Part shown: piece after piece, positions 13,918 through 64,000 of the stretch
Layout of the letters: each line of letters starts with the position of its first letter
How positions within the stretch are numbered: the stretch's first letter is position 1
Assembly: GCA_038087875.1 (NCBI GenBank)
Contig: CM075981.1
Location: 72,850,001-72,914,000 of the forward strand
Reading direction: 5' to 3'
DNA length: 64,000 nucleotides
Source: Malacoraja senta
Lineage: Eukaryota
Program-made: the position numbers and the translations under genes
Notes under the pieces: generated by a model
Databases searched by the model: none
Told to the model about the DNA's origin: nothing
What the model saw: the letters and a program-made list of their open reading frames with translations, nothing else

Positions 13918-14049
13918 NNNNNNNNNNNNNNNNNNNNNNNNNNNNNNNNNNNNNNNNNNNNNNNNNNNNNNNNNNNNNNNNNNNNNNNNNNNNNNNNNNN
14001 NNNNNNNNNNNNNNNNNNNNNNNNNNNNNNNNNNNNNNNNNNNNNNNNN
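13918..14049. other. Assembly gap (N run)
   Basis: Run of N. Confidence 1.
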
Positions 14050-15557: not shown

Positions 15558-15720
15558 ATGAAATCTGTTCTGATCGCAATTACACTACTAAGTTCAGTTT
15601 TGGCAGATGAACAGAACATCGAAAATCTTGTTTCCACACTGGAGAAGGTGTCTACCTCTTTAGAAACTTCAACAGATCAACTTAATTTGAATGGAATATT
15701 AGGAACTGTTATTTTAAACG
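15558..15720 (+). CDS. C16orf89: C16orf89-like A exon 1 (signal peptide [16 protein letters not shown]...[12 protein letters not shown])
   Basis: ATG at 15558 (in-frame upstream ATG at 15519); GTAAGT donor at 15721. Confidence 0.85.
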
Positions 15721-18700
15721 GTAAGTCGAATGACAGATCCTGTCTATGGTGTGGCCAGGGTTGTCGCCCTGTCAGGCACCCCTCGGTTGTAAACTAATGC
15801 TGGTACTGAGACCTTGTAGGTTTGTTAATGTAGAGTGAAGTACAGAGTTCAGTTTATTTATTCATGTGTGTATATATTTATATAATGGTATATGGACACA
15901 CTGATCTGTTTTGTAGTCAATGCCTACTATGTTCTGTTGTGCTGAAGCAAAGCAAGAATTTCATTGTCCTATCAGGGACACATGACAATAAACTCTCTTG
16001 AACTTGAACTTGAGAGATGATGGGGTGGAATGGCCCAGATATTTCCACCCTGAACAGTTATGAGATGTCATTAATCCATTCAAAAAAGTTAAACATATTC
16101 TGTGTATATTAATTCTTGCACCAAGATAGAAAGAAGGATGTAGAAAGATAATTAAAAAAAATAATTGTTATTTTCAAAATTGCTAAACTTGGAATAAATT
16201 AATACAGAAGAGGAAATCAAAACTTACTTTCAGGTGCAAGCTGCTCACAATAACTTATATCCAGTTATAAAATTGTGAAGATTTTATATTTGGAGCCAAA
16301 CAATCAAGCGTACAAAAAGTCAAGAGTAAGAAAAATTAAAAAAAGTACTTAAATAAAAGATAGTTATGAAAAAGGTTGATTGTAAATGAAGACACAAGAA
16401 CTGCTGATACTGGAATTCTGAGCTAAACTCACTACTGGAGGAACTCAAGGGATCAGGCAGCACCAATGGAGGGAATGGACTGACAACTTTTTGGGGCCTT
16501 ATATATTTATATTAGTTCAAATTTGCATCAGATTTCTTGTTGAATTTAAATGTGATTTTGCCATTTTTATTCTGCAGCTCAACTGCTAGGGGCCCTTCGT
16601 AGCTGGAATATTCCAGGACCAGGTTCTGTTGCACTGCATGTAAGGCTGAAGGGTGTTGTGAGAAAAGTAAACATCGTAACAAGAAATGGTATGAGAGAAC
16701 TAAGAATAAATGAGCCTAAAGATTACAAAGGTAAACTTTAAGATTATGCAATTAATAAAATACCAATTTTCTGCCATTTTTTAAGTTTGCACTTTGCTCA
16801 CTCTGTTCTACTTGAGTTTGACTTGATTGTATTCATGTACAGTATTATCTGATAGGATAGCATGCAAAATAAAGCTTTTCACTGTACCTTTGTACCTCTG
16901 ACAATAATAAACCTAAACTTAAAACCTAGGTTTAATTTGCAAATCTGCTCTGCATTCATGGGCAAGATGAAGCCTCACTCATTACCTGGTGTGTCTTCAA
17001 TAATTGACAGATCATGACTCTAATGGCGCCAGTGAGTGATGTCTGTAGTTATTAATATCGTTAAATTAAAACAAAAGGTACTAGATAACATTCAACAGTT
17101 CAGGCAGCAACAGTTTGGCAAGACAATATGGAGTTAATGTTTTGGGTACAGGCACTCCCAGGTTTACAAACACTCATTTTATGTACAGCCCATACACTGG
17201 CAGTATGGATTTGTTGGCTGCTGTGGACCTGTAGGCATTTTCGGTTGTGTGAGGATTCTGATTAATAAAACAAAACCCTGTCTTAACCTGGGGTGGACCT
17301 GCAATGAATGATGATTCTTCACCTTTGCACTACACAGCAGTGACTAAGAAGCATTTATTTGATTGTATTGCACTGTCATAATTTAAATAAGAAATATTTT
17401 CTCCTAAGACATGTTTCTCAGAAACTCATTACTGTGTATGTGTTTGCTGTCCAAATTCCACTGATTATAACTGACACCTAGGACCGTGTTCAAAGGATAC
17501 CAACATGGAGACAGATTATCTAAGAATAGTTTACAAGGCTGGTCATAGAATGCAAACAATTCCAAAATGACCATGACTAATATCCATCCAACACGTCTAC
17601 AAACTTTTCAACAATATCTGTTAGTTCCACGTGTTTTGTTTTCTCCATAGTTAAATCCAAGCTCTCTGTGCAGCTCCCTTCTTATTTTTGTGGCTATCTT
17701 CTCTGCTTCCAATGTTTTTTGCTATCCAATAAAAGTTCAATATCTGTGTACCCATTAGATTGTTTCGCAAATTGCATTAACTCTGCCCGTAGGAAAACAT
17801 CACTGGAGAGAATTGATCAAAAGTTTGTTTATTGAGTATTTGAGGAAGTTCTCAGGGGTAAAAGGGGTAGAAACTTAGCGAGTGTGATCTTGAGCTTATG
17901 GTCTAGGTGGCTGAAGACATGACATCAGTGGTGGAGCAACAAAAATTAGGGAGATGGCATAGAATTGGAGTAGGTAATAGAAACGGAATGGTATTGAGGC
18001 TAAAGATTACGATTCAATGGGGATCTAGAATTCTTGGCAAGACTTGGTAGATTAGGAGCGAGTGGGCAAAAAAATCTGATGTATGATTGTGTTGTGAGGT
18101 ATTTTTAGACGTGGAAGCACTCTTCTCACTTTTAGGCTGCAAGCAAAAGAGATTCTTCACAAAATAACAGCAGTGTTTGGCACAGATATATCTAAAGAAG
18201 ATTCACTTGTTATAATGATTCTGTTTCTCTTGTCTCCAAGCTCATCTATTCGTTTGATTGTGATAGCACGAAAGGCTTGGTTGACTGCTTCACTATGATG
18301 AAATCGTTCAAACTTTCCAAGTGAATCACATAAAATATGCTCCACAATACAAGGATTTGTGGGTAGGTAGGTTAATTGGCCATTGTAAATTGCCCCTAGT
18401 GTGTAAATTAATGGAAGATTCTCAGGTACTTGATGGAAATGTGGGGAAAATTGAATCTAGCAAGCATCCACTTTTACACTAGTCCTACTCAAACGCATTC
18501 TATTTTCCCCACATTTCCATCAAGTACCTGAGAATCTTCCATTAATTTACACACTAGGGGCAATTTACAATGGCCAATTAACCTACCTACCCACAAATCC
18601 TTGTATTGTGGAACATCCAGAGAAAACCCAAATGGTCACATGGAGAATGTGCAAACTCCACACAGGCAGCATTGGCTGAAAAGATTGAACCTAGGCTACT

Positions 18701-21700
18701 GCAGCTGTGTGGCAGCAACTCTACTAGTTACGCCACTGTGTTGCTTAAAGGGCAGGCTGTTTTTTGGGGACTCTTTAAGATTAAGTCTTTCAGTCAATTG
18801 ACCCTTATGCTGAGGAGAAGCCTACTATGATTGTGTCCTTCATTCAAGAAGGAGATGAAAATTGGTCTAGCCTGCTGAGTGTGTCCAGCATTTTCTCATA
18901 TTACTGCTGTTCAGGAAGTTGTATGTTGGAGATGTGTTGCTAGAATGACCCTGAAGGATAGGCTTTCTTTCCTTCCTCCAACCTCTTCTGGCAGGTTGTT
19001 CAGTGGGTCTTTTCCCATTTCAACTTTCAGTCATGCTGGGGTCTGGGCGAGTAGCCCCAAATCAACCATCTCCTCACATACACCGAAGCCATCTTGAGGT
19101 AAAACTCCCATGCAGTGTAGTTGTCTGCAATCAAGTACACATATCCACCTCCTGCAAGTATGGTGACTAGTTTTATTTCACAATAAAGCTTTATAAAAAT
19201 CACGCAGAAAATTATAGTTTCCAAATACCATCCCTAATTATTCTCATTTCTAAGTACGTTCCTTGGGAACTAAGAGTGCTATGTCCTTATTAAGCACCCT
19301 TTTACTGGATGTCAACTGTATCTACGACATTCTAATCTCCAAGTCTGAAGGCCGGATTGTCTTAACCTGCGCTGGAGCCTCGAGTGCAAGGTTTAGGCTG
19401 AGGTTTGAGTGCAGTTTTGTGAGAGTGGAGAACAATCATATTTTGTTTGGGATAATTAAGGAAGCTGATAGGGGAAATATGAATGAAACAATCGTGAAAC
19501 TCTTGAAACATACCACTGTTAAATTAGAAAATGTCCAATACAGACGTATCCCTAAAGACAATTGACACCTTAATGAGTAAGAGTAACTTTTACTCCTGTA
19601 CTCCAACGTTTAGAGAAACTGTGCTATTTGTATGCTTGATGTCAATAAGCGAGTTTGGTATTCTGACTGCGCATGCCCAGGTCATAGGTCACTAGTTATA
19701 AACAGTCTCGGCAACGGTGGTGCTGCATTGTGTGCAGGCTTGCGTTTCGTCCGTAGTCGGGGTCGGGCCCGGCTCTACGTCGCTGCAGGCGCTGTCTAGT
19801 TGCTGTTGGGCCATTCCCGTCCCCTCCACGGTGTCCCGTCCCTGTCTGGAGGTGTCCAGGGTGGCCCTGGGCTGGCGGGGCGGCGCTGGACTTGCAGTCG
19901 CTGGCTCCAGCTCAGCTCTGCCTGTTCTGCTGGATTGGCCGGCAGCCCTCCACCTCCACCCCCCTCCCCTCAGTCCGACACCGAGATCCTGCTGAAGATG
20001 GGCAGCCGCCGGCCCTGCTCGAAACCGGGCGATTCGGAGCCGCTGCTGCTGGAATCGCCCTGGTCGGAGAGAGAGTCTGTGGATGGGCTCCTGGCGGCAG
20101 CAACAACCCCCTCCCCCTCCCTTGCCCAGCCCCAAGCCCAGATTCCGGGCCAACTCTAGGTCGGGGCTGAAGGCCGCCAGCTGCGCTGCCCAGTCGAGCA
20201 CTGGGCCGGAGGAGGCTGAGCCCAGGCTGGCCCTCTGGCGCAGGCGAGGCTGGGGCCCTCGCTCCTCCTCGGGGTTGTGCTAGAAGTGGCAGCGGGTACC
20301 GTAGGGGCAGAAGCCGGTGGTGTGGAAGGTGCTCCATCTTGTACTTGGGGTGGCGGCTGAGGGAGCACAGCTCCGCCAGGCTGTGGGTGAACTGACACTT
20401 GTCGCCATAGCGACCCATCGGGGAGCGGGTTCCTCTGGAGTTGGGCTGGAGTTGGCGCTTCTTCTCCGCACTGGCTGTGGGCCTGGGGCCGCTGGTGTCG
20501 CCAGACACGGTGGTGGTTGGCCCGGCGGGAGAGGCGGAGGTGAGCTGAGGTTGGTGCTTCTCTGCGCTGGCTGTGGGCCTAGGGGCCGGTGTCCTGTCGG
20601 TCGGGACGTCACCGGCCGTCCCCCCGGGCAGGGATGGGACGCTCGAGTGGGGGGACGGGGATGGTCCAGTGGCAGTTCGGCACCGCTTGCTGCGCCGGGG
20701 ACTCGGGTTTGATCCTGGCTGCGGATGAGGCGTGGGTCTGTGTATGTGCAGCTGCCGAGAGCCGGTCCAGTCAACCCCCCCCGTCTCACACTCGCATCTG
20801 CCCCTCTATCTGCCCCCTGACAAATACAAACTTGAAAAAAGACAACAAATTGGACCCAAACTAGACTCACTGTATCTACAGCGCTTCATTCGATTTTTAT
20901 TTATAGCATTTGCCCTTTGACAAATTCCATGATTCCTTGCGTTTTTCGGAATACCGAACTCGCTTATTCTGGTGGAGGTCTCTGATGGATTTAAGATTAT
21001 TATTGTATTTGTTTCCATTCAGAAGTGACTCATTTAAAGTTTAAATGGTTATGAAAGAACTGCAGATGCTGGAAAAATCTAAGGTAGACAAAAATGCTGG
21101 AGAAACTCAGCGGGTGAGGCAGCATCTAATAGCCCTGTCCCATGGTACAAGTTCATTCCAAGAGCTCTCCCGAGTTTAAAAAAAATCAAACTCGTGGTAA
21201 GCACGGAGAATGAACGTAGCGGGTACGTCGGAGCTCGGGGACGTCTCTTAGCGGCTCGTAACGCTAATGGCAAGTACTCGGGAAGACTCGCTAACGGCAG
21301 GTAAGCACGGGAAGACTCGTGAAGATTTTTCTTGAAAAATGTCCACGAGAGCCCCGAGTACCGACGAGTGGCCAATACTGTAAATCTCCGAGTTCGAATC
21401 AGGGCAAACTCGGGAGAACTCTTGGAATGAACTCGTACCGTGGGACAGGGCTTTAAGGAGCAAAGGAATAGGTGACGTTTCGGGTCGAGACCCTTCTTCA
21501 GACTTTTTATTTTTTAAGTTTAAAAATATGTTTCCCTTTGAAAGATGGGCTGGATCCTTCTGATTATGGCGGGAGGCTCTAATCAAAATTGCCACTACTT
21601 AGCGTTTAAAGCTGGATCAAGCCCTATGAATTGTTAACATTTGAAACTAATGGACAGACTTAGAAGCTTATATTGGTTTATTTGCCCCACTGTTGTACTC

Positions 21701-24700
21701 CTTGTGGACTGGAACATTGAAGCTCAATTTTGCTGGGATTAAGCAGCATGATCAGTTTAGTTTATTGTCACGTGTACCGAGGTACAGTGAAAAGCTTTTG
21801 TTGCACGCTAACCAGTCAGCGGAAAGACAATGCATGATTACAATCGAGCCATTCACAGTGTACAGATACATGATAAGGGAAGAACGTTTAGTGCAAGATA
21901 AAGCCAGTAGAGTCTGATCAAAGATGGTCCGAGGGTCACCAATGAGTTAGATAGTAGTTCAGGACTGCTCTCTAGTTGTGGTAGGATGGTTCAGTTGCCT
22001 GATAACAGCTGGGAAGAATCTGGAGTTGCGCGTTTTCACACTTCTATACCTTTTGCTTGATAGGAGAGGGAAGAAGAGGGAGTGGCCTGGGTGCGACTCG
22101 TCCTTGATTATGCTGGTAGCCTTGCAGCATAAAGTGGACAAGCGCTTTTCAATTTTTTTTACGGGTGCACGATTGGAGATACTATTGATTTTAAATGGTT
22201 AAGATTTAAGACATTTTAAAGGAAGGTAACTGTTCAAACTTATTTTTGCTTTCATTCAATTCCTAATTTTATCAACAAGAATTACAGTGAGATCTTGATC
22301 AATTGGGCCAAAGAATTTCAAATAAAGTTTAATTCAGATCAATGTGAAGTTCTGTATTTTGGGAAGATGAATGAGGGCAGGACCATTACAGACTCCCGGT
22401 AAGTATTGTATAGCATAGTGATCTAGGAGTAAAAATACCTGGTTCATTGAAAGTAGCACCACAGGAAGATTGGTGAAAAAGGCTTTTGACACAAACCTGA
22501 GAATCATATTATTGGATAAGATAATCTTGAGATGTTATCACAAGAGTTTGCAGTTTAATTTTAATTTTGCTAATAATTATTGATATTGGGATATTTTATT
22601 TCTTTGCCTAGTCTATCCAAAATTGCTAAATATAAATCTTTGGACTCTAAGTCATCGATGGAAAACAACACGCAAAGCACAAGTTAAGGCTGAAGGGAAA
22701 GGCCCAGATTGTGCTGACAATCATTCCATGAAGCCATGCCTTATTCATTTATTGACTGTTTGGTATGTCCTGTCTTTGCTTCTATAAATTGTTTGTACTG
22801 TACAACAGATAAAGGTCCACTCAAGTAGGGAAAATAAGTATCATAACTCTCCTAATACAGATCACGACAATGAAACACTTAACATAACTTTAATAATTCT
22901 TCAAACATCATATCAATATCTCTTTTCAATACAAAATGTAATTTATCTCTAGGCTGAAACCAAGTAAGCAATATGTTGTTCTATTCATCAGGGTTTAAGA
23001 CTTTCAAGAATTTAATCACAGCTTAATGATTTTATGAATATTTTATATGAGGCATCAATTGTAATTTTAGCTTGGTGATGTATTTGTAAGAGATGTTTGA
23101 GGTTTAAGTTTTCATCCTGATATCTATCTATCTATATACTATTAAAACTGTGTGTGTGTGTGTGTGGGTGTGTGTGTGTGTTTGTGGGTGTCAGATTTGG
23201 CCTTTGATTCCTTGCTCCGCCAAAACCACACGCGAAAACTCCGAGATTTTTTCCATTCCGCTAGACATTACACTTTTACATACCCTAACACACCCATTAT
23301 TAGATTTAGACATTTTTATGTACACATTTTAAAATAAAATCCCCCCCCCCCCCCCCCCCCCGTCCACTCACTCATTTTGTCGCCTCCTGCTGGCCAGCCA
23401 ACATAACGGCTGCTGCCACCCGGCTCTGCTCCAAAAACGCCGACATTTTTTTTCTTTCACTGGCGATTTTTGCAACTGCCACCTGCCTCTCCTCCATTAC
23501 CTCCCCCCCCCCCTCCCCCCCGGGCCGGCTCTCTCACGCTGGCTCAAGCGCCCGGCTCTCCTCCAAAAACACCGACATTTTCATTTTTTCCCAGGCGATT
23601 TTCACTGCTGCCGCCCGGCTCTCCTCCAATACCCCCCCCGGCCGGCTCTCTCACGCTGGCTCAAGCGCCCGGCTCTCCTCCAAAAACAACTACATTTTTC
23701 TTCATTCGCGGGCGATTTTCACTGCTGCCGCTCGGCTCTCCTCCACTACCCCCCACCCCCCCCGGGCCGGCTCTCTCACACTGGCTCATGCCAAACATCG
23801 GCTCTTCCCCCTCTGCTTTTCGCCGTCCTCTGTTCGAGGACGCCGAAAAGCAGCGGCGGAACAACCCATCTTTGCCTTCAGCCAGCGTGACAGAGCCGGC
23901 GCGTCAACGGCCTGTTGGCCCGCAGCCCCATTGAGGGCGTATGCAGCGTCTCGACGGCCTAACGCAGCGTCTCGACGTCGTACACAGCGTCTTGACGGCA
24001 TAAGCCGCCTACGCCCCCTACGCCGTCAAGACGCTGCGTACGACGGTGAGACGCTGCGTACGGCCGTCCAGGTGCTGCCTACGCCGTCAAGACGCTGAAG
24101 CACGTTCGGGAACCAGACCCCGGGGTCTGAAGCACGTTCGGGGACCAGACTCAACGGGTCTGCACTTGGTCCAGTATCTGTTAAAAATGATAAACTGACA
24201 GCTCTGCTCTTATTTTACCACTCCTAGTTTAGATGGTTACTTTTGTGAGATCAAAGACAGATTAAAAAGTGGATGCTGGAGAAGGCCAATCAACCCAGTG
24301 AGCCTTCTATACCATTTCTATGTGATGGTGGCTGAACATGAAAATTAAGTCACCTGTTCTGCCTTCACTCCTGATCTCTTGATGTCCTTAGCCTTTTGAA
24401 CCATATCTATCTCCGTCATGAATATATGTAATAAATTGATTTTGGCTTCCTTCTGTGGCAGAGAATTTCACAGGTGTACCATTCTTTTGGTCAGGAGTGT
24501 GTTTTCCTCCAACTGAATGAATTACTCTGTACCCTTGGGCTGTGGCCCGTGGAACTGAACTTCCCACTGTCCACCTGAGCTGCATAGTCTAGTCAGGACT
24601 TAATATGTCTCAACAAGGGTTCCTCTCATTCATTTATTCTAGCAAAAATCAGCCCAATTGTCCAGACTATTATTCATGCCAACTTCAGTGGAATCGATCT

Positions 24701-41832: not shown

Positions 41833-41997
41833 NNNNNNNNNNNNNNNNNNNNNNNNNNNNNNNNNNNNNNNNNNNNNNNNNNNNNNNNNNNNNNNNNNNN
41901 NNNNNNNNNNNNNNNNNNNNNNNNNNNNNNNNNNNNNNNNNNNNNNNNNNNNNNNNNNNNNNNNNNNNNNNNNNNNNNNNNNNNNNNNNNNNNNNNN
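41833..41997. other. Assembly gap (N run)
   Basis: Run of N. Confidence 1.
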
Positions 41998-43769: not shown

Positions 43770-43932
43770 ATGAAATCTGTTCTGATCGCAATTACACTAC
43801 TAAGTTCAGTTTTGGCAGATGAACGGAACATCGAAAATCTTGTTTCCACACTGGAGAAGGTGTCTACCTCTTTAGAAACTTCAACAGATCAACTTAATTT
43901 GAATGGAATATTAGGAACTGTTATTTTAAACG
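43770..43932 (+). CDS. C16orf89: C16orf89-like B exon 1
   Basis: Same as copy A except Q->R; GTAAGT donor. Confidence 0.82.
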
Positions 43933-52900: not shown

Positions 52901-55900
52901 AGCAGCGGAACAACCCATCTTTGCCTTCAGCCAGCGTGACAGAGCCGGCGCATTGGCCCGCAGCCCCATTGAGGGCGTACGCAGCGTCTCGATAGCCTAA
53001 CGCAGTGTCTCGACGTCGTACGCAGCGTCTTGACGGCATACGCCGCCTACGCCGTCAACACGCTGCGTACGCCGTCAAGACGCTGCGTACGACGGTGAGG
53101 CGCTGCGTACGGCCGTCCAGACGCTGCCTACGCCGTCAAGACGCTGAAGCACGTTCGGGAACCAGACCCCGGGGTCTGAAGCACGTTCGGGGACCAGACC
53201 CAACGGGTCTGCACTTGGTCTAGTATCTGTTAAAAATGATAAACTGACATCTCTGCTCTAGTTTAGATGGTTACTTTTGTGAGATCAAAGACAGATTAAA
53301 AAGTGGATGCTGGAGAAGGCCAATCAACCCAGTGAGCCTTCTATACCATTCTATACCATTTCTATGTGATGATGGCTGAACATGAAAATTAAGTAACCTG
53401 CTCTGCCTTCACTCCTGATCCCTTGATGTCCTTAGCCTTTTGAACCATAATCTATCTCCGTCATGAATATATGTAATAAATTGATTTTGGCTTCCTTCTG
53501 TGGCAGAGAATTTCACAGGTGTACCATTCTTTTGGTCAGGAGTGTTTTCCTCCAACTGAATGAATTACTCTGTACCCTTGGGCTGTGGCCCGTGGAACTG
53601 AACTTCCCACTGTCCACCTGAGCTGCACAGTCTAGTCAGGACTTAATAAGTCTCAACAAGGGTTCCTCTCATTCATTTATTCTAGCAAAAATCAGCCCAA
53701 TTGTCCAGACTATTATTCATGCCAACTTCAGTGGAATCGATCTGGTGATTCTTCAGTGGAATCGATCTGGTGATTCTTCAGTGGAATCGATCTGGTGATT
53801 CATCAGTGGAATCGATCTGGTGATTCTTCAGTGAAATCGATCTGGTGATTCTTCAGTGGAATCGATCTGGTGATTCTTCAGTGGAATCGATCTGGTGATT
53901 CTTCAGTGCACTCTACCCACAGCATGAACATCCTTCCTCAGATAAAGAGACCAAAACTGTACATCGATTAGCACGCAACAAAAGCTTTTCATTGTACCTT
54001 GGTACACGTGACAAAAAAAGTAAATTAAACACTGAGCTCGAGATGTCAGTAAATTATCCCAGTTTCTGCACTCAATTCCTCTTCCTATGAAGGCCAACAA
54101 CAAAATTTGCCTTGCTGATACCTGGTTTGTTTTCAAGGTTGATTTGCATGTTATCCAATCAGATCAGTTACTACTACACATTAATACAATCAAGTTAAAC
54201 TCAAGTACAATAAATAGGGCAAAGTACTATAGTGCAGAATACAGTTATGGAGATCAGGCAGGAAAATGGAGACGAGGTCAAGCTCAGATCACCCATGATC
54301 TTACTGAATGGCACAGCAAGTTTAAATGTATGAAAGATGACTCCTATTCCTATTTCACGTGTTCTTGTAGATATGATTTAACATTTTTTTTCTACCGCTT
54401 CTTTGACAATTTCTCTAATCTGCAAGGGTTATTGCAAATGAATCCCATAATAGCAGGTTTGTTTGTGATCACTACAAATTTCATGAAAAACTGGGCAAGA
54501 GCTGGCCCACAATGAAGAATCTACTTCAAATTGCTCGAGGAACTGTACCAAATCTAAACATTTAGCTCCTGATTTTATATCACTGAATTGCTTTTGGGGG
54601 AGGGAATTATAATAAGAATGTGAATCCAATAAAGTCAGCTAAAATTGTACCTCAAACTATCAGGCAAATGATACAAAAGCTTGAAAGCACACACCTTCAG
54701 ACTCGGGAACAGCTCCCTTGCCTCTGTTCTCAGGTTAAGAACAGTTCTCACACACTTTAGAGCTAATCCCGATCTTCCAACCTTCCTTCATAGCGACAAT
54801 GGACTTTTTCTCTATAAATGTAACACTACAATGCTGTAAAACTATATTTTACACTCTGTTATTGTTCCCTTTGTACTACCTGTTGTAGTTGTGTATGATT
54901 TGATTGTACTCGTGTATAGTATGACATGATTTAATTGATCAAACAAAAGCTTTTCATTGTATCTCGGTACACATGACAATAGTATACCTATACCAAGAGA
55001 ACAGCAAACACCGGCAGCTTCACTTGGGGATGACAGAACGGTATCATTATCACCCCAGATAAATCCAGAAAAGTGTCAATGCTTCAGAAACCATTCTTAT
55101 TTCTATGGCAATCTGCACAGAAAATAAATGGGTGTGGAAACCTGGCTTTGAATGACAGACAGTAATAATTATTTTTACAGGGTGATTAGTTAATAATATA
55201 ATTTCACATGAGCTGCTATTGTCATAATCCACAAAAACAAATTATGTGAATATATTTTTATTCTTTAAAAATTAAGGAAGAAATCTGATGCGGAGTGCAC
55301 GGAAACATTGAAATGTAGGAAGTTGTCGGTAATACTAAGTTGCCCAACACACTCCATGCTACAACAGTTCATATACTTTATGGTTGCTGAGATGGTAAGT
55401 AAAATCATTGACTCAATAATAGCATTGATTGATAAAACAGTTGCACGCATTACTGTAATAATTCCTTATATAGTAAATATAATGCCTGCCTCAATTTATA
55501 GGGCATTAGTTACGTACAGTCAGAAAAAACGAGTCTATCCCAAGGTTGACTCATGAAAATGAGAATGAAAAGTGTTTGAGCACTTCACAAACACCGCAAT
55601 AAATCACCTCGACCAACCATCTTCCTGCCCAATCAGGGTTGAAATGCTTTTGGTGACAAAAGCAAAGCTAATTACCTACTGAGATTCCCTAGAATCAGTC
55701 CATATCCTTTTACCTACAATTCAAATCACACAGAAAAGGTCTTTGACTACTGCCACGTACTGTGTTTCTCAACTGAATAGCTTTGAGGATCAGTTTCTGT
55801 ATAACAGTTGAAATCTTGGAAAGTTACTGGGTCAGAATGTACTGTGATAATAAAGTGAAAGTTAATCATCATCTCCCCTCTATCAAAGGCACCATTATTT

Positions 55901-58900
55901 ATCAGGAATATAGACATAAGGCGGCAGCATTTCTGTTGCCATTCAGTTTATATTACAGCAGGACATAGAAACATAGAAAATAGGTGCAGGAGTAGGCCAT
56001 TCGGCCCTTCGAGCCTGCACCGCCATTCAATATGATCATGGCTGATCATCCAACTCAGTATCCTGTACCTGCTTTCTCTCCATACCCCCTGATCCCTTTA
56101 GCCACAAGGGCCACATCTAACTCCCTCTTAAATATAGCCAATGAACTGGCCTCAACTACATTCTGTGGCAGAGAGTTCCAGAGATTCACCACTCTCTGTG
56201 TAAAAAATGTTTTTCTCATCTCAGTCCTAAAAGATTTCCCCTTTATCCTTAAACTGTAACCCCTTGTTCTGGACTCCCCCAACATTGGGAACAATCTTCC
56301 TGCATCTAGCCTGTCCTACCCCTTAAGAATTTTGTACGTTTCTATAAGATCCCCCCTCAGTCTTCTAAATTCCAGCGAGTACAAGCCAAGTCTATCCAAT
56401 CTTTCCTCATATGAAAGTCCTGACATCACAGGAATCAGTCTGGTGAACCTTCTCTGTACTCCCTCTATGGCAAGAATGTCCTTCCTCAGATTACGAGCCC
56501 AAAACTGTACATAATACTCCAGGTGTGCTCTCACCAAGACCCTGTACAACTGCAGTAGAACCTCCCTGCTCCTATACTCAAATCCTTTTGTTATGAAGGA
56601 CGTTTCTGCATACTTTATCATTTATTTATTAAAAGTCTGATCTTTTTAGTGTGTATATGTGTATATGTGTGTGTATATGTGGTCGTCTTTACATCTTCGC
56701 AAAAACGCTAGGCGGTAACGATTACATTTTTACATATTTCGATTGACATTTTTCCCGTCGAGGGAAAATCACCTTATCTGAACATTTCATGCTTTATTTC
56801 TCGACCTATTCTCAACTCATTAGTGATTAAAAGTCTAAAAAAGGTCAAAAGACTTTGAAATTAAAACCACCAGCTTCAAATGATGACATCACAATGGCTC
56901 AGCTAGCAGAGACCATCCTCAATGAAGATTTTATCCTATATTTGACACGTTATTTGCGATTAAAGCTTTAAAAATGGCAACTTTCACAAGATTCTTACAT
57001 ATTCTGATTAACATTTTCCCCCTCGAAGCAGAGATCACTTTCACTGACCATTTTATGCTTTATTTCTTGACTTATCACTGATTAAAGTTTTAAAAAATCA
57101 ATATACCCTTAATTTCAAACCGAACAGCTTTAACTGATGATGTCACAATGGCTCGACTAGCGGGGGAGGGCGAATTGCTATTGCAACACTCAGGACAAGT
57201 GCAATCGGAATTTTTTTTAAAGATCACTGCTGAGGAAGGCAAGGGGAGTGCTGGAATCTTACGTTCGGGAACAGCTTAAGTTGGAGGACCACGCCTCCCG
57301 TGGGGCTACGGGTTGGGACCGGGTGCGTTGAGGTAACAGACCCAATGGGTCTGCACTTGGTCTAGTTACTATTAAAGATAGTAATTTTAGTAACAGTGAT
57401 ATATTCTGTTTTAAATAGAAGTTATGCTGCATCATCTTTTATTGATTGGTGATAAGGATACTGTGCATTGTGTTCACCTCTTCCACAATTGGACCTTAGC
57501 CAGTGACAGTGCCATTCCCAGAGCTGGTTTCATGGTTGTTGTGGGAACAGCTTGAACATTTGGGAAGGATGAGCACTTTATCACTGAAGAACATCTTGTG
57601 ATTTAAAAAGTGCAGATGGGACCTTTGCGTCTTGGCTATTACAGCACTGTTAAATTTATTGTCTGTGATCCATCAGCAGGCACTCTAGACAATCAGTGCA
57701 ATGGCAGTGGGAGGAGAAAGTATTGGGAGTTAAATTTGAGGACTTCAGTGCAACATCAATCTTTTGTCCGTTTCTAAAAGCATGCATTTTCCTTTGAAAT
57801 GATCTATTTTTCAATTCAATTTGTAGATGCGTTGCTCAAATGTTCAAGGATTTCAGCACCCAGTGACAGATGCTCAAATGAGTTATAGGGAAGTCCTCTG
57901 CTTGAAAATGATGGAAGTAAACATGGAAATTGATAAGAATGGTTTTCCATCTGATCATCGTAATATATTTCTAGAAAACAGTAAGTGGCTTAAACTTAAG
58001 AAGAATTGTTAAGATAAAATTGAAAAATGAAAATGGTCTTCTCAATGTTTGCAAAATAGATCATTTTGTGCATGAAGGTCTAGAAATGTTAGTGTGTTCA
58101 ACAGATCACGCTACAGTGGCACAGATATTTAGTCTTAAAGCTTGGCTTGCTTGAGGCAAGGGGAAAATGTGTTGCCCGGATTTTGTTTCCCAAGGCTGGA
58201 CATCGGAGTTGTTCTCACTGGAGACCTGCAATATTTCTCGGGTAGACTGGGATGGCAAAGACTGGAACTATTTATTGAGAATCCAGAGTTTGGGGGAAAG
58301 ACTATTACTATTCACAAGGGTTCGAAGGGTGTGGTCATAAAGTCATATTGCTTGAAAACAGATCATTTGGCCCATTAAGTCCATGCTGATCAGTGGGAAC
58401 CCATCCATCTTCTCTTATCTTTCACCACTTAGCCCAGAGTCTTCTGCACCTGGGAGATTCAAGTTACCCTCCCGACACTTCTTGAATGTTGTCAGCCACT
58501 CTACTGCAACTCTCTCTTGAATTATATTCTAAGTACTCACTATTCTCTCAGTGAGAAATGTCTCTCCCAGACCCCCTCTAAATATTTAAGGTAGACAAAA
58601 GTGCTGGAGAAACTCAGCAGGTGAGGTAGCATCTATGGAGCGAAGGAATAGGTGACGATTCGGGTCGAGACCCTTCTTCAGACTGATGTGGGCGTAGGGG
58701 GGCGGGAAAAAGAAAGGAAGAGGCGGAGACAGTAAGTTGTGGGAGAGCTGTGAAGGGAAGAGGAAGGTGGGAGAAAGCAAGGACTACCTGAAATTGGAGA
58801 AGTCAATGTTGATACCGTTGGGGTGTAAACTACCCAAGCGAAATTTGAGGCGCTGCTCCTCCAATTTGCGGTGGGACTGGCCATGGAGAAGGCCCAGGAT

Positions 58901-61900
58901 AGAAAGGTTGGATTCAGAATGGGAGGGGGAGTTGAAGTGCTGAACATCAGGTTGGTAAATGCGAACTGAGCGGAGGTGTTGGGCGAAGTGATCGCCAAGC
59001 CTACGCCAATGTAGAGCAGTTGACACCTAGAACAGCGGATGCAATAGATGAGGTTGGAGGAGGTGCAGGTGAACCTCTGCCTCACCTGGAAAGACTACTT
59101 GGGTCCTTGGATGGAGTCGAGGGGGGAGGTAAAGTGACAATCCCCTCTAAATATTTAATCCATACCCTAAATCTATGTTCTTTAGTTTATTTACCTTTGG
59201 TATGGGGAAAAGTTTCCAGCAGGCTTTTCTATCTGTGCCCCTAATAATTTTAGGTACTTTCTTAACCTTCTTCGCTCCAGGGAAAATAGAGATAACCTCT
59301 CCAGTCTCTCCTCGTATCAGGATTAAACTTCACCTGCCAATTCTCCGCCCATTTCACTTGCACATCAAGATCATTTTGTAGCCCAAGACTCTCTTCCACA
59401 CTGTTAACAACTGCAATAATCTTTGTGTCATCTGAGAACTTGCTGATCATACCACCTTCATCCCCATGCTCATCACTTGGGTATATGACCAATAACAAGG
59501 GTCTCAGCACTGATTCCTGTGGAACACTACTTATCATAGTCATAGAGTGATACAGTGTGGAAACAGGCCCTTTGGCCCAACATGTCCCAACTATACTAGT
59601 CCCACCTGCCAGTGTTTGGTCCATATCACTCTAAACTTGTCCTATCCATGTACCTATCTAACTGTTTCTTAAACATTGGGATAGACCCAGCCTCAACTAT
59701 CTCCTCGGGCAGCTTGTTCCGTACACCCACCATTCAATGTCATTAGCATTCAATCACAATTTTTTTAGTGGAAATGCAGTGGAGATGAGGTCTGAACAAA
59801 GGATTCTGCAATGGCCTGGTCTAAAATCTCAAGCATATGTCCTACAAACCCACACGTCTTTGGGATGTGGAAGTAAAATAGAGTACCCAGACATAACCCA
59901 TGCTGTCACAGGAAGAATGTGTAAACTTCGCAGACAGTACCTGAGGTCAGGATTGAAGTTGGATCTTTGGCACTAAGAGGCTGAATACTTTCAGAAATTA
60001 TGCTTTTTCTTGATGTGTGTCTGATACACAGAAAGCTACACAAGTGGAGTCATAGGAGGCATGATACAGCGTGGAAACAGGCCCATCGGCCCAACTTGCC
60101 CACACCGGCCAATAAGTACCATCTACACTTCCCACCTGCCTGCATTTGGTCCAATATGTGTAGGAAAGAACTGCAGATACTGGTTTAAATCGAAGGTAGA
60201 CACAAAATGATGGAGTAACTCAGCAGGACAGGCAGCATCTTGTCCCACCTGCCTTGCATTTGGTCCATATCCCTCTAATCCTGTCCAATCCATGACCTGC
60301 CTAAATGTCCATGTAAATGTCAATAGTAGTAAAGTAATAAAATATAACATCAATTTCCTTTATGTAGATGTGAGTATTGTGAATGTCTAATCATTGATGT
60401 ATTAGTTCTAAGGAGCTAATTCGTCACTCTAGCATCAAACATACTTGCATCTTAGTTTGCAGTTGACATGAAAATTAGTGGAGTGATAATGAAAAAACTT
60501 TGTCTAAGGATACAATAGGACATAGATCAGCTGCAAAGTTGGGTGAAGTGGTGGGAGATGGACTTTGATCAAGCAACTGCGAGTTGATGCACGTTAGCAA
60601 GTGAATTCCTTGCAGAAATGGTAGGGACCAGGTAGGTGCGTTGATGTACAGTGAGTCCTTGGGGTGCAAGTCAATAGGTCCTTGAAAGTAGCAGGTAGAT
60701 AGGGTAATGAGGATGATTGAGGTGTGGAGTATGAGGTGGGACATCACGTTGCAGCTTTTCAAAACATTGTTAAAAAAATGGTCTAACAATGATAACTAGG
60801 AAACATCACTATTCATCTTCCTTCAGTATGAAAATAAAACCACTGTAATCCTGTGTTCTCTGTTATTTAACGAACTTTGTATCTTTTCAATCAATGTCCC
60901 TTTCTTGCTCTGTCCTTCCACTTTGCTGATAAGGCTATATGACATTTCACAAAAGTTCCCATCGCCCCTCTTAGATTAATTGTTATTGTAATTCTTTTGT
61001 AATTAGCCTGATTCCTACTGCTATTTACAAACCTGTACTTGTTGCAAGCATCTTTTTCTATTGCTTTTTCTCCCTCTCTTTCATCGCCAGGGGACCCAAA
61101 TTTGTTTTTCTTCTTTCTTCTCAATGGAATGCGCTTCCACTGTACCTGAAAAGCAGCTGCCTGTTCCACAGTTTAATTGGGCCAGATTCACTTTCTAGCC
61201 ATTGAGATTAGCTTTCCTCCAGTCGATTATTTTTATCCTGGATTACTCCACTTTTTCTATACCTAATTAAATGCTGATTAAAGGAACCCAACTGGCTAAA
61301 TTTAGCAAACATCTTGCAAAGCAGTGGTGAGCCTGATTTAATGGCACGGCTCAATAGGATTCAGTACAGTTATCCACTAAATATTAGGGAACTCATCCCT
61401 GCAAAGATCTCCTGTTGTGGCCTTGGGTCAAATGTTTCTGTAATTATTCTCCAATAATGCATGGTTAAGATTGTGATAATTGATGGTACACAAAAATGCT
61501 GGAGAAACTCAGCGGTTGCAGCAGTATCTATGGAGCGAAGGAGATAGGCAACGTTTCGGGCTGAAACCCTTCTTGATGTTCTCTAGTTGCTCTGTTAGCC
61601 GTGTTCCTGAACGGCCGTGGCTACGATGTTATATGATTTGGATGAACTGGATGAGGGAATTGAATGCAACATCTCCAAGTTTGCGGATGACACGAAGCTG
61701 GGGGGCAGTGTTAGCTGTGAGGAGGATGCTAGGAGGCTGCAAGGTGACTTGGATAGGTTGGGTGAGTGGGCAAATGCATGGCAGATGCAGTATAATGTGG
61801 ATAAATGTGAGGTTATTCACTTTGGTGGCAAAAACAGGAAAGTAGACTATTATCTGAATGGTGGCCGATTAGGAAAAGGGGAGATGCAACGAGATCTGGG

Positions 61901-63942
61901 TGTCATGGTACACCAGTCATTGAAAGTAGGCATGCAGGTGCAGCAGGCAGTGAAGAAAGCGAATGGTATGTTAGCATTCATACCAAAAGGATTTGAGTAT
62001 AAGAGCAGGGAGGTTCTACTGCAGTTGTGCAGGATCTTGGTGAGGCCACACCTGGAGTATTGCTTACAGTTTTGGTCGCCAAATCTGAGGAAAGACATTC
62101 TTGCCATAGAGGGAGTACAGAGAAGGTTCACCAGACTGATTCCTGGGATGGCAGGACTTTCATATGAACAAAGACTGGATAGACTCGGCTTGTACTCGCT
62201 AGAATTTAGAAGATTGAGGGGGGATCTTATAGAAACTTACAAGATTCTTAAGGGGTTGGACAGGCTAGATGCAGGAAGATTGTTCCCGATGTTGGGGAAG
62301 TCCAGAACAAGGGGTCACAGTTTAAGGATAAGGGGGAAGTCTTTTAGGACCGAGATGAGAAAATCATTTTTCACACACAGTGTGGTGAATCTCTGGAATT
62401 CTCTGCCACAGAAGGTAGTTGAGGCCAGTTCATTGGCTATATTTAAGAGGGAGTTAGATGTGGCCCTTGTGGCTAAAGGGATCAGGGGGTATGGAGAGAA
62501 GACAGGTACAGGATACTGAGTTGGATGATCAGCCATGATCATATTGAATGGCGGTGCAGGCTCGAAGGGCCGAATGGCCTACTCCTGCACCTATTTTTTA
62601 TGTTTCTATGTTTCTATATAATTGTAGGTATGTTACAAAACTTACCTTCAGTCGCGCTGTAATTCTGCCACTGGCCGTGTGCGCGGTTTTTGGTGCCTTT
62701 AAGGGGGGGCGGGGTTAAAACGCGGGTTTCTCCTCCCTTGTCCTGGGAATATTTTGTTGGAGTACAAGCCTTGGCTGACAAAATCGTTCCTACCGGCGTT
62801 TTGTGAATTTTTTATTTTGATTAAATCGTCAATGTCAGCGCTACAGTAATTTTAAAAGCAGCTCCTGAAGCGTCAACGCCGATAACGGGGACGGATTTCA
62901 CACACGGGACAGGTAAACGAAAGTGCTTTCTTTAAATGTATAAAAGTGCTTCTTAAGAAGCCTTTAATTCACATTTTGTCATGCGACACGGTGATTTTAT
63001 TCCCCGAATTAACGGCAGTATTTTTCATGCCAATACGGGGTTAAATTCACCGCAAATCAACGTTCCAAAAGATCGCGTTCCAGTAATCCTCACTCGCAAG
63101 ATGAATTAAATGCCCATTAATTTACAGGTATTAAACATTCAATTCCTTCCATTTGGCCTGTAAATTCATGAAAATTAGATTTAAAAATTATGTTATATTG
63201 TGAATTATTGTGTGAATGTTATTTGGACACTTAGGCTATTTAAAAATGTTAATCTATTCTTAAGAAATTGATAGATTTTTAGATCTAGTAATTGAATTTT
63301 GTAATTAGCTACAATTAGGTAACTAACTAATTATATGCTTTACTTTCATGTCTTCGAAGTAAGATTGTTTCATATTTGTTTCAGAATGCTTCAATCTATA
63401 ATACCTGAAAATTTCTTTCAGTTATCATAATTTTTAAGAAAGTTATGGGCTTTTAACTGTCCTCGATCACAGCTTTTGTGTTAAGTCAATGGAAAAGCAA
63501 TAGGGAACTAGATGCTAATTTCTGAGTATGATAATGGCCATAACATTTTTAATACTGAAGATATGAAAGTGAATTAAGTGTCAAATTAAACTTCTTTTTA
63601 TGCTTTATCTGATGGGATAAATTGCAGACGTTATTTTTAAAATCTCAAAATTTTGTAACATTGCTAATAATTGATGATAAAATTATCAATGATTATATTA
63701 TTAAATGTTTTTTTCTCTCTATCTTTGTTTCCAGAGAACACCAAAGAGTGTGAGATGTATTAGCAATGGCATGTAGTATTCATGATTTAACGTTAATTGT
63801 TTATGATCAAATTTTCTGATTAAATGTATATTTTATGCAGTATCGCTTTGTGGGATGATGGGATATTCTGATTTTTACAAGCCCAGGTGGTATAAAACCA
63901 TTCTGTCATGGCAGCAATCATTAGGTTGCTTTGACTATAAAG
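43770..63942 (+). CDS. C16orf89: C16orf89-like copy B, gene span exons 1-6 (3' end beyond window)
   Basis: Exons 43770-43932, 44791-44943, 51692-51842, 55277-55394, 57827-57980 and 63841-63942; splice sites intact, no stops. Confidence 0.82.
44791..44943 (+). CDS. C16orf89: C16orf89-like B exon 2 (QLLGTVSRWNIPGP...INEPEDYK)
   Basis: 153 bp, splice sites intact; 8 aa differences from copy A. Confidence 0.82.
46197..47055 (+). mobile_element. Unit-B-specific insertions: LINE 3'-tail repeat (~46197-46512) plus CR1 3' fragment (~46519-47055)
   Basis: Absent at the matching site ~17970 in unit A; [22 protein letters not shown]...GTGY*. Confidence 0.9.
48726..50049 (-). mobile_element. TIR/ZFP36-fragment element, duplicate in unit B
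   Basis: Near-identical to 19645-20967 with the same flanks. Confidence 0.87.
51692..51842 (+). CDS. C16orf89: C16orf89-like B exon 3
   Basis: 151 bp; 6 aa differences from copy A. Confidence 0.8.
53726..53908 (+). repeat. 25-bp minisatellite, ~7.3 copies (paralogue of the 24683 array)
   Basis: Same unit, fewer copies. Confidence 0.93.
55277..55394 (+). CDS. C16orf89: C16orf89-like B exon 4
   Basis: 118 bp; 3 aa differences from copy A. Confidence 0.8.
57827..57980 (+). CDS. C16orf89: C16orf89-like B exon 5
   Basis: 154 bp; Q->H versus copy A. Confidence 0.85.
61484..62617 (+). mobile_element. CR1 LINE ORF2 3' part (duplicate of 32741-33875)
   Basis: 300-aa ORF at 61617-62519. Confidence 0.95.
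62625..63666. mobile_element. hAT-like TIR element (duplicate of 33883-34924)
   Basis: Same TIRs and flanks. Confidence 0.75.
63841..63942 (+). CDS. C16orf89: C16orf89-like B exon 6
   Basis: 102 bp; identical to copy A. Confidence 0.87.
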
Positions 63943-64000
63943 GTGAGTTGATTGATTAATATTAATTGTTTAAAATGGAAACTACTGTTTATGTGCCAGA

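What the first reader, a model, noticed from the sequence alone, without database searches (positions are those of the whole stretch)
15558..63942. Two C16orf89-like copies whose exons have diverged faster than their introns
Seen (hand count over 841 shared coding nt): 19 nonsynonymous versus 2 synonymous differences. Per exon: exon 1 1/0; exon 2 8/1 (ALRS->TVSR, V->A, R->T, R->G, K->E); exon 3 6/1 (K->E, I->V, L->F, A->P, H->P, I->T); exon 4 3/0; exon 5 1/0; exon 6 0/0. Exons 2 and 3 differ at ~5-6% of sites, intron 1 at roughly 1%, and ~18.0-21.6 kb of intron 2 is almost identical. No stops or splice losses; all Cys are kept; several changes make copy B less basic. Known: exon-over-intron divergence is typical of diversifying selection in toxin, immune and gamete-recognition gene families; human C16orf89 is a poorly characterised secreted protein. 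Inference: a lineage-specific, adaptively diversifying secreted-protein family, or, if A and B are alleles, balanced polymorphism.
Basis: partly seen in the sequence, partly recalled or inferred. Interest (0 to 1): 0.82.

Follow-up and report, generated by a model that had tools for sequence, protein, structure and literature searches.

The report
Fast-evolving skate C16orf89-like gene pair
A skate-specific, probably secreted relative of the poorly known protein C16orf89 changes its amino acids about three times faster than neighbouring non-coding DNA changes, and the two near-identical versions in this window are either a very young gene duplicate or, more likely, the animal's two parental copies laid side by side by the assembler.

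Summary
Exons differ at 2.5% against 0.78% for 19.7 kb of aligned non-coding DNA (p=1e-5). Exons 2 and 3 differ at 5.3%, with no difference in the 60 bp on either side.

The gene is a 7-exon, 307-aa short paralogue of C16orf89 (Pfam DUF4735). Intact orthologues exist in the skates Amblyraja and Leucoraja.

The A/B dN/dS of 2.7 is not significant alone (p=0.13). A four-sequence codon model gives omega 3.2-3.3 for the N-terminal exons (p=0.0015-0.0055) and 0.78 for exons 4-6. Positive selection on the N-terminal half is therefore supported, and it also acts between species.

Whether A and B are two genes is not settled:
- Copy A is a whole 27.8-kb contig between two gaps.
- B's homology starts exactly at the end of an inserted transposon.
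- Three other skates have one full copy.
- Earlier scan notes report many gap-spanning duplications in this assembly.

I put two haplotypes of one locus at about 60% and a real young duplication at about 40%. Read depth could not be measured. A four-fold excess of changes on the A lineage at 22.6-26.6 kb is unexplained. No transcript was found.

The parts
14448..35258 (+). Copy A of the duplicated stretch. Its gene continues to 39650 and its contig to 41832.
   Evidence: Self-BLAST blocks at 97.7-99.3% identity to 42660-64000. Colinear with Amblyraja L001 and Leucoraja L002.
42660..64000 (+). Copy B of the duplicated stretch, cut off by the end of the window.
   Evidence: B's homology to A and to Amblyraja starts at 42660, which corresponds to 14448 in A.
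15558..39650 (+). Gene A, a short C16orf89-like (DUF4735) paralogue of 7 exons and 307 aa. Exons: 15558-15720, 16578-16730, 22612-22762, 26308-26425, 28851-29004, 35099-35200, 39568-39650 (stop included).
   Evidence: Pfam PF15882 match on exon 6, 48.6 bits against a cut-off of 31.2. tblastn with family members. AG/GT at all borders. Orthologous exons of the same lengths in Amblyraja and Leucoraja.
43770..63942 (+). Gene B, exons 1-6: 43770-43932, 44791-44943, 51692-51842, 55277-55394, 57827-57980, 63841-63942. Exon 7 lies outside the window.
   Evidence: Coordinates mapped from A through the alignment. The frame is open and all borders are AG/GT.
16591..16603 (+). Cluster of five differences within 13 bp in exon 2 (B: 44804-44816), covering residues 59-63. 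The motif at residues 60-63 is ALRS in A, TVSR in B, ALRR in Amblyraja and TISR in Leucoraja.
   Evidence: Contigs of two further species carry the B-like letters at 16591, 16592, 16598 and 16603.
13918..14049 (.). Assembly gap of 132 N upstream of copy A.
   Evidence: Its flanks are colinear with Leucoraja, where 91 bp separate the matching points.
41833..41997 (.). Assembly gap of 165 N between gene A and copy B. It is intergenic.
   Evidence: The left flank matches Leucoraja and Rhinoraja up to its last base. The right flank starts inside a transposon.
41998..42663 (+). 3' part of a Penelope-like retroelement. Its end abuts the first base of B's homology to A.
   Evidence: It matches other copies at 29608-30164 and 40162-40454, and copies in L001, L002 and L004. 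Many of these matches end at 42660-42674.
17971..22599 (+). Block nearly identical in A and B (4 substitutions, three 1-bp indels). Most of it is an old element in intron 2 that carries a ZFP36-like fragment. B's counterpart is 47052-51680.
   Evidence: Present in Leucoraja and in organism B, absent from Amblyraja.
46197..47051 (+). 856 bp present only in B. Outgroup comparison indicates a deletion in A.
   Evidence: Amblyraja has the matching 243-bp piece at L001 6265-6507. The contig of organism B leaves A's sequence at 17970.
22600..26600 (+). Tract with a four-fold excess of changes on the A lineage (42 against 12). It contains exon 3 and exon 4.
   Evidence: p=5e-5. Unexplained.

Best explanation
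The window holds one fast-evolving gene seen twice.

The gene is a skate-specific short paralogue of C16orf89 (DUF4735). It has 307 aa and a signal-peptide-like N-terminus. It keeps the family's cysteine framework but has lost about 40% of the otherwise conserved residues.

Its N-terminal half (exons 1-3, above all residues 60-63, 76, 94 and 102-115) is under recurrent positive, diversifying selection in skates. This is why the exons differ more than the introns. I infer that this half is a binding surface that follows a changing partner, such as a pathogen, a gamete or a ligand. That step is inference.

The two versions, about 1% apart, are most likely the two haplotypes of one locus. On this reading the 27.8-kb contig 14050-41832 is an uncollapsed haplotig that the scaffolder placed in front of its allele. 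The sequenced animal would then carry two alleles that differ at 19 of 280 residues.

Shown: the counts, the exon/intron contrast, omega above 1 between species, and preservation of the open frame. Inferred: secretion, the nature of the selective agent, and the allelic status.

The confidence given is for the whole statement. Positive selection alone I put at about 0.75, and allelic status alone at about 0.6.
For: Selection:
- 19 nonsynonymous against 2 synonymous differences.
- Exons differ at 2.5% against 0.78% for non-coding DNA, p=1e-5.
- Both lineages show a 3-4-fold exon excess after polarising with two outgroups, p about 0.0015 each.
- The codon model gives omega 1.83 for all 280 codons (p=0.03), 3.2 for exons 2-3 (p=0.0055), 3.3 for exons 1-3 (p=0.0015) and 0.78 for exons 4-6.
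- The proportion of nonsynonymous sites changed in exons 2-3 is 14.1% against 5.3% in introns for A-Leucoraja (p=1e-7), and 9.6% against 5.1% for A-Amblyraja (p=0.005).
- In a closer species (run X2) the exon-2 region differs at 9.3% while the introns differ at 3-4%. All six changes listed at 16610-16635 are nonsynonymous.

The gene is functional:
- All seven exon lengths are identical in four sequences, although about 7 indels are expected at the intron rate (P about 1e-3).
- Random substitution keeps the frame open in only 2-9% of trials.

Haplotypes rather than two genes:
- A gap lies between the copies, and copy A is a whole contig bounded by gaps. A gap between copies is one of the criteria of PMC9516828.
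- B's homology begins exactly at a transposon terminus, as a simple insertion would give.
- Amblyraja, Leucoraja and Rhinoraja have one full short gene.
- Scan notes list about 160-180 gap-spanning near-identical duplications in this assembly. They include partial copies of RAB11FIP3, RBM19, GTF2I and ARHGEF4 (unchecked notes).
Against: - Read depth, the decisive test, could not be made. Only Logan contigs were available, and the second individual (X27) was too thinly covered.
- The gaps here are 132 and 165 N, not the 200 N of the other noted cases. The first gap's size agrees with Leucoraja, so the A-to-B link may rest on real spanning reads.
- About ten adaptive changes on each of two alleles within roughly 0.4% of neutral time is easier to picture for two loci.
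- A/B non-coding divergence is 0.8%, up to 2% locally, and comes with several structural differences. From general knowledge, that is high for elasmobranch alleles.
- The choice of exons 1-3 for the codon test was made after seeing the data.
- No transcript of the gene was found.
- The gene has lost exons in Rhinoraja.
- Organism B shows a 1-bp deletion in exon 2.
Confidence: 0.45

Rival explanations
1. A and B are two real genes. On this reading a tandem duplication of about 28 kb is specific to this species and about 1% old. Both copies have since fixed amino-acid changes under positive selection, and gene conversion keeps parts of the introns (17971-22599) almost identical.
For: - The selection evidence is the same as for the best explanation.
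- Both lineages carry about ten exon changes, which two loci can fix independently.
- Divergence varies from 0.07% to 2% along the unit, as conversion would produce.
- The size estimate of the first gap is accurate, so the A-tail to B-head link may be read-supported.
- Old tandem duplication did happen at this locus in skates.
- No third sequence type was laid on exon 2 or on 17.3-18.3 kb in run X1.
Against: - The boundaries of the copies coincide with contig boundaries and gaps.
- The duplication 'breakpoint' sits exactly at a transposon end.
- Three other skates lack a second full copy. Leucoraja's second copy is an old truncated one and is not the counterpart of B, which has exon 6.
- The assembly seems rich in false duplications.
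Confidence: 0.35
2. No adaptive process is involved. On this reading the gene is drifting under relaxed constraint, and the exon excess comes from a few multi-base mutation events, short conversion patches from another copy, or consensus errors in the small contig A.
For: - dN/dS of A against B is not significant alone (p=0.13).
- Five of the 21 differences lie within 13 bp.
- Six of the seven exon-3 differences sit in a tract where A has a general four-fold excess of changes.
- Omega for exons 4-6 is not below 1.
- The paralogue has lost 31 of 72 conserved family positions.
- The gene is degraded in Rhinoraja.
Against: - The exon excess survives collapsing the cluster to one event (p=7e-4) and is present on both lineages.
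- Omega above 1 is also found on branches that do not involve contig A, such as Amblyraja against Leucoraja with pN/pS 3.1 in exons 2-3.
- Neutral drift gives exon divergence equal to intron divergence, not two- to three-fold above it.
- The frame and the exon lengths are preserved.
- No donor for the cluster exists in the window.
- A's private states are absent from Leucoraja's second copy and from Rhinoraja.
- Few 1-bp indels separate A and B, which argues against a poor consensus.
- Several A-type letters (16641, 16662, 17265 and others) are present in independent contigs of run X1.
Confidence: 0.12
3. The two exon types are old. On this reading they are kept by balancing selection as alleles or as paralogues since before the skate genera split, while recombination or conversion has homogenised the introns, as in MHC genes.
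For: - At residues 60-63, B, Leucoraja and two further species share one motif (T-V/I-S-R), while A and Amblyraja share the other (A-L-R-R/S).
- E102 is shared by B and Leucoraja.
- Outgroups conflict at 2-3 of 9 exon-2 sites but at only 1 of about 97 non-coding sites.
Against: - The codons tell another story. A's Arg62 is CGT, one step from the AGT of B and Leucoraja and two steps from Amblyraja's AGG. Codon 61 is GTT in B and ATT in Leucoraja (and the L002 states). This points to repeated change at the same residues, not to shared descent.
- Synonymous sites and the 60 bp next to the exons carry no old divergence.
- A's six exon-3 states are found in no other sequence.
Confidence: 0.08

Closest known systems
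Canonical C16orf89 (UPF0764, Pfam DUF4735), a vertebrate protein of unknown function whose human transcripts are enriched in thyroid (PMC6473073)
   Same: - Pfam match.
- All family-conserved cysteines are kept.
- N-terminal signal-like segment.
- In Amblyraja the short gene lies directly upstream of the canonical gene. In Leucoraja and Rhinoraja it lies upstream as well, separated by the old copy-2 remnant.
   Different: - It is shorter, 307 aa against about 340.
- It lacks the conserved basic R-V-K-R-R stretch.
- Only 41 of 72 conserved columns are kept. Invariant D45, Y181, H185 and D244 are replaced by N, H, Q and N.
- Omega is above 1 in its N-terminal half.
Accelerated evolution of snake-venom PLA2 and three-finger toxin genes, where exons diverge faster than introns (from my own knowledge of the literature, not checked here)
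   Same: - Protein-coding exons are more divergent than introns.
- Nonsynonymous changes exceed synonymous ones.
- The cysteine framework is conserved.
- The product is a secreted protein.
   Different: - There is no evidence of a toxin role, a gland or a multigene array.
- At most two full copies exist, and possibly only one.
- Expression is unknown.
MHC class I/II alleles, with diverged peptide-binding exons and homogenised introns (from my own knowledge)
   Same: If A and B are alleles, both show very high amino-acid divergence (6.8% here) concentrated in one or two exons, with far more similar introns and dN above dS.
   Different: - There is no sign of old allelic lineages. Adjacent neutral sites are not diverged.
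- The fold is unrelated.
- No population data exist.
False heterotype duplication in assemblies (Ko et al. 2022, PMC9516828)
   Same: - The two copies are in tandem on one scaffold with a gap between them.
- One copy is a small whole contig.
- The region is more divergent than its surroundings.
   Different: Half read depth and single-copy k-mers, the defining tests, could not be measured here.

Membership tests
C16orf89 / DUF4735 (PF15882) | Significant match to the Pfam profile | tested here: met
   Exon 6 alone scores 48.6 bits against a cut-off of 31.2, at profile positions 205-233. Exon 3 gives a weak match at positions 65-109. NCBI names the Amblyraja and Leucoraja orthologues 'C16orf89 homolog', and both carry PF15882.
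C16orf89 / DUF4735 (PF15882) | Conserved cysteine framework | tested here: met
   No cysteine column is among the 31 conserved family columns that the short paralogue has changed. Cys positions are identical in A and B.
C16orf89 / DUF4735 (PF15882) | Invariant polar residues (D45, Y181, H185, D244, P0005 numbering) and the basic R-V-K-R-R stretch | tested here: not met
   They are replaced by N, H, Q and N, and the basic stretch is absent from all four short-paralogue sequences. This is a divergent subfamily, not an orthologue of the canonical gene.
Adaptively diverging tandem paralogues | Two loci in one haploid genome | tested here: inconclusive
   The assembly shows two copies. However, a gap lies between them, copy A is a whole contig, and B starts at a transposon end. 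Depth could not be obtained.
Adaptively diverging tandem paralogues | dN/dS significantly above 1 | tested here: inconclusive
   For A against B, dN/dS is 2.7-2.9 with p=0.13. On the four-sequence tree, omega is 1.83 (p=0.03) for all codons and 3.3 (p=0.0015) for exons 1-3, but that partition was chosen after seeing the data.
Adaptively diverging tandem paralogues | Both copies transcribed | not testable with these tools
   No RNA run of this species was found. Run X22, guessed to be RNA, behaved as DNA of another species.
False heterotype (haplotype) duplication | Gap between the duplicated pair on one scaffold | tested here: met
   The gap at 41833-41997 lies between the copies, and 13918-14049 lies before copy A. 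The criterion is from PMC9516828.
False heterotype (haplotype) duplication | Each copy at half the diploid read depth | not testable with these tools
   Only Logan contigs were served. In X1, contigs made mostly of shared words have depth about 44-57, and the variant-rich contig has 28.8. That ratio is expected under both readings, and there is no single-copy baseline.
Balanced or trans-species polymorphism | Deep coalescence visible at linked neutral sites | tested here: not met
   There are no differences in the 240 bp that flank exons 2 and 3 (P=3e-6 at the exon rate). The proportion of synonymous sites changed in exons 2-3 is 2.8%.
Balanced or trans-species polymorphism | Both types present in several individuals | tested here: inconclusive
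   The second sample, X27, has depth 1-4 and covers only two diagnostic sites. 15737 is B-like, and 15613 is probably B-like.

The most novel reading that the evidence does not exclude
The short C16orf89 paralogue may be a hyperpolymorphic, MHC-like locus of skates. On this reading one animal carries two alleles that differ at about 7% of residues. The alleles are built by rapid, repeated substitution at the same few N-terminal positions (60-63, 76, 94, 102). Different genera hit those positions convergently. The scaffold is an alpha/alpha-toroid-like fold that has given up the family's conserved polar site. That would make it a previously unrecognised recognition molecule of cartilaginous fish.
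Probability: 0.2. Interest if true: 0.75.

Novelty: new member of a known kind. Interest (0 to 1): 0.5.

Why it matters
C16orf89 is conserved across vertebrates and has no known function. Here a lineage-specific offshoot keeps the cysteine framework but has dropped the family's invariant polar residues. It evolves under positive selection in a defined part of the protein. That points to where a partner would bind and gives an entry for experiments.

If the two versions are alleles, skates carry an unusually polymorphic secreted protein, which would interest comparative immunology or reproductive biology.

The case also carries a practical warning. This pair would be counted as a 'gene family expansion under selection', although it may be an uncollapsed haplotype in an assembly that seems to hold many of them.

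Tried and rejected
- **Old copy 1 / copy 2 pair homogenised by conversion.** Rejected. Leucoraja's second copy is truncated in intron 5, at the point matching window 32666, and has no exon 6 or 7, whereas B has exon 6. Amblyraja and Rhinoraja keep only the intron-5 remnant.
- **A's private changes as relics of that old copy.** Rejected. 29 of 31 A-derived sites carry the B state in Leucoraja copy 2, and Rhinoraja agrees where it aligns.
- **Templated origin of the 13-bp cluster.** No copy of 12 bases or more exists on either strand of the window.
- **Read depth and a second individual.** Only Logan contigs were served. X1's contigs are a mosaic of A and B letters because assembly bubbles were popped. 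X27 is too thin. There is no single-copy baseline, because 14100-14447 is swamped by transposon matches.
- **RNA evidence.** No RNA run of the species was found. X22 proved to be DNA of a relative.
- **Full-length orthologues from other skates.** A protein search with P0040 found only the Amblyraja/Leucoraja cluster. I could not hand in the spliced 307-aa protein because it has no reference, so it was not searched, folded or looked up.
- **Fold.** Foldseek against the PDB gave nothing below E=0.02. VIA-align gave alpha/alpha toroids at Z 10-13, which is a lead only for an all-helical model.
- **Phylogeny of the 468-bp head segment.** A and B are sisters, and there is no one-to-one orthology with the two Leucoraja copies.
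- **Other gap-spanning duplications in this genome.** Scan notes were searched for follow-ups on them. None was reported.

Full report
**What is there.** The window has two assembly gaps, 13918-14049 and 41833-41997. Self-comparison shows that 14448-35258 recurs at 42660-64000 in four colinear blocks. These hold 20,500 aligned bases, 175 substitutions and 36 small indel events. In addition, 856 bp are present only in B (46197-47051) and 225 bp only in A (31043-31266). Copy B runs off the end of the window. Divergence is very uneven along the unit:
- 0.7% in the 5' flank and intron 1
- 0.07-0.09% over 17971-22599
- 1.4-2% in introns 3-4
- 0.46% in intron 5

**The gene.** Exon 6 matches Pfam DUF4735, the C16orf89 family, at 48.6 bits. 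A search with that exon returned family members. tblastn with them, together with the splice sites, gave a 7-exon, 307-aa model for copy A and exons 1-6 for copy B. All borders are AG/GT and no stop codon occurs.
- The nearest protein, P0001, is the Amblyraja radiata 'C16orf89 homolog'. Its 90% cluster also holds a Leucoraja erinacea protein.
- Both loci (L001, L002) are colinear with copy A at about 93-95% DNA identity. Both contain intact 307-aa genes whose seven exon lengths are identical to A's.
- The window therefore comes from a third skate. Earlier scan notes also call it a skate genome.
- The N-terminus looks like a signal peptide. That is my reading of the sequence, with no predictor run.

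**The gaps.** The gap at 41833-41997 lies between A's stop codon (39650) and B's start codon (43770), so no reading frame depends on it.
- Its left flank is colinear with Leucoraja and Rhinoraja up to its last base.
- Its right flank starts inside a Penelope-like element.
- Continuity across it cannot be shown, and I did not try to fill it.
- The first gap (132 N) is flanked by sequence that lies 91 bp apart in Leucoraja.

Over 841 shared coding bases there are 21 differences, 19 nonsynonymous and 2 synonymous.
- Cysteines are kept. Net charge is +9 for A and +4 for B.
- Exons against non-coding DNA: 2.5% against 0.78% (p=1e-5). Exons 2+3 alone: 5.3% (p=2e-7).
- Counting the five changes in 13 bp as one event, p=7e-4.
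- No difference lies within 60 bp of exon 2 or exon 3.

**Is it selection?** dN/dS for A against B is 2.7-2.9 but not significant alone (p=0.13). The stronger evidence comes from adding outgroups.
- Polarised with Amblyraja and Leucoraja, 11 exon changes are on the A lineage and 8-10 on the B lineage. Each lineage shows a 3-4-fold excess over its own non-coding rate (p about 0.0015).
- A GY94 codon model on A, B, Amblyraja and Leucoraja gives these values:

| Partition | Omega | p |
|---|---|---|
| All 280 codons | 1.83 | 0.03 |
| Exons 2-3 | 3.2 | 0.0055 |
| Exons 1-3 | 3.3 | 0.0015 |
| Exons 4-6 | 0.78 | not significant |

  The partition was chosen after seeing the data.
- The nonsynonymous proportion in exons 2-3 is 9.6-14.1% between species, against 5.1-5.3% in introns (p=0.005 and 1e-7). 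The synonymous proportion is not raised, so a mutational hot spot is unlikely.
- Contigs of a closer species (X2) were laid on A. They differ by 3-4% in introns but by 9.3% around exon 2, and the six listed changes at 16610-16635 are all nonsynonymous.
- Some residues differ in every sequence. Residue 94 is R, G, K and S in the four sequences.

**The motif at residues 60-63.** It reads ALRS in A, TVSR in B, ALRR in Amblyraja and TISR in Leucoraja. X2 and X22 carry B-like letters there.
- This looks like shared old types, but the codons argue for repeated change.
- A's Arg62 is CGT, one step from the AGT of B and Leucoraja and two from Amblyraja's AGG.
- Codon 61 is GTT in B and ATT in Leucoraja.
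- Adjacent neutral sites carry no old divergence.

**Is the gene functional?**
- For function: at the intron indel rate of about 5 per kb, about 7 indels are expected in the coding sequence over the tree, and none is seen (P about 1e-3). Random substitution keeps the frame open in only 2-9% of trials.
- Against function everywhere: Rhinoraja's copy lacks exons 5-6. X2 shows a 1-bp deletion in exon 2. No transcript or full-length protein of this subfamily is in the protein collections. No RNA run of the species was found.

**Two genes or two haplotypes?**

For haplotypes:
- Copy A is a whole 27.8-kb contig between gaps, and the copy boundaries coincide with contig boundaries.
- A's upstream 400 bp are ancestral. 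B's homology starts exactly at the terminus of an inserted Penelope-like element, as a plain insertion in one haplotype would give.
- Amblyraja, Leucoraja and Rhinoraja have only one full short gene. Leucoraja's second copy is an old (5-8% diverged), truncated one, and it is not B's counterpart.
- Scan notes list about 160-180 near-identical duplications across gaps in this assembly, several inside conserved single-copy genes (unchecked).
- A gap between copies is one of the published marks of false heterotype duplication (PMC9516828).

For two genes:
- The gaps are not the 200-N kind, and the first one is sized correctly.
- Divergence of 0.8-2% with several structural differences is high for alleles.
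- About ten selected changes on each lineage are easier to fix at two loci.
- No third sequence type appeared in X1.

Depth, the decisive measure, was not available. X1's contigs are a popped-bubble mosaic of A and B letters, with depths of about 44-57 for mostly shared sequence and 28.8 for the variant-rich contig. That ratio fits both readings. The second individual, X27, is too thin. I put haplotypes at about 60%.

**Unexplained.** Between 22600 and 26600, 42 differences are derived in A against 12 in B (p=5e-5). The rest of the unit is symmetric, 27 against 29.
- A's states are absent from Leucoraja's second copy and from Rhinoraja.
- They show no telling sequence context, and few indels accompany them.
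- A clock predicts symmetry under any history. This needs either a local rate change or a consensus problem in contig A.
- It matters because six of the seven exon-3 differences lie in this tract. Against the tract's own A-lineage rate, the exon-3 excess is only p=0.012.

**Family context.**
- The short gene lies upstream of the canonical C16orf89 gene in three skates.
- It keeps all conserved cysteines but only 41 of 72 conserved columns. It has changed invariant D45, Y181, H185 and D244, and it lacks the basic R-V-K-R-R stretch.
- An AlphaFold model of the canonical stingray protein is all-helical (pTM 0.86).
- Its best structural neighbours are alpha/alpha toroids: GH9, GH76, GH88/105, terpene cyclases and intrinsic factor. 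They score Z 10-13 over 210-260 residues. Foldseek E-values are weak. This is a lead, not a membership.
- The literature gives C16orf89 no function beyond thyroid- and lung-enriched expression.

**Verdict.** The phrase 'two copies' is doubtful, and 'family' is overstated. This is a new example of a known kind of evolution, in an uncharacterised protein family, with an assembly caveat that raw reads would settle in an afternoon.

Noticed in passing
window 17971-22020 (A) and 46197-51100 (B); also 2805-3419: Intron 2 holds an old element of 4-4.9 kb. In B it is bounded by inverted 243-bp repeats (46215-46457 and 50833-51069). It carries a degenerate ZFP36-like CCCH zinc-finger fragment on the minus strand (19692-20870). 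A second fragment, 83% similar, lies upstream at 2805-3419. The element is present in Leucoraja and in organism B. It is absent from Amblyraja, which has only the 243-bp piece.
   Followed up: partly
window 22600-26600: There is a four-fold excess of substitutions on the A lineage (42 against 12, p=5e-5). They are not shared with any other sequence examined, and a molecular clock does not predict this under any history.
   Followed up: partly
L002 33884-39756 and L004 135-9239 (Leucoraja erinacea CM054026.1): Leucoraja has an old (5-8% diverged), truncated second copy of the short gene. It comprises the upstream region and the exons up to exon 5, and it ends in intron 5 directly before the canonical C16orf89 gene. 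Amblyraja (L001 21970-24270) and Rhinoraja (L003 7328-9115) keep only the intron-5 remnant.
   Followed up: yes
L003 1-4770 (Rhinoraja longicauda CM130183.1): The short paralogue there lacks exons 5 and 6. L003 1390|1690 corresponds to window 28706|37388. Its exon 4 is only 62% identical at protein level, so it is probably a pseudogene.
   Followed up: partly
window 29608-30164, 40162-40454, 41998-42663; 32874-33776: Several copies of a Penelope-like (GIY-YIG) retroelement are present, and a LINE reverse-transcriptase ORF. One Penelope-like copy ends exactly where copy B begins.
   Followed up: partly
model of P0005 (canonical C16orf89, Hypanus sabinus): The confident all-helical AlphaFold model has alpha/alpha toroid enzymes and binders as its nearest solved structures (Z 10-13). 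This is a possible fold assignment for DUF4735.
   Followed up: partly
window 24683-24945 and 23419-23788: There is a 25-bp tandem repeat of 10.5 copies, and GC-rich repeats of about 117 bp. Both lie in intron 3 and differ in length between A and B.
   Followed up: no
window about 5566-13671, minus strand: The upstream neighbour is colinear with a glycosyltransferase family 1 gene annotated in Leucoraja (L002 1-7053).
   Followed up: no
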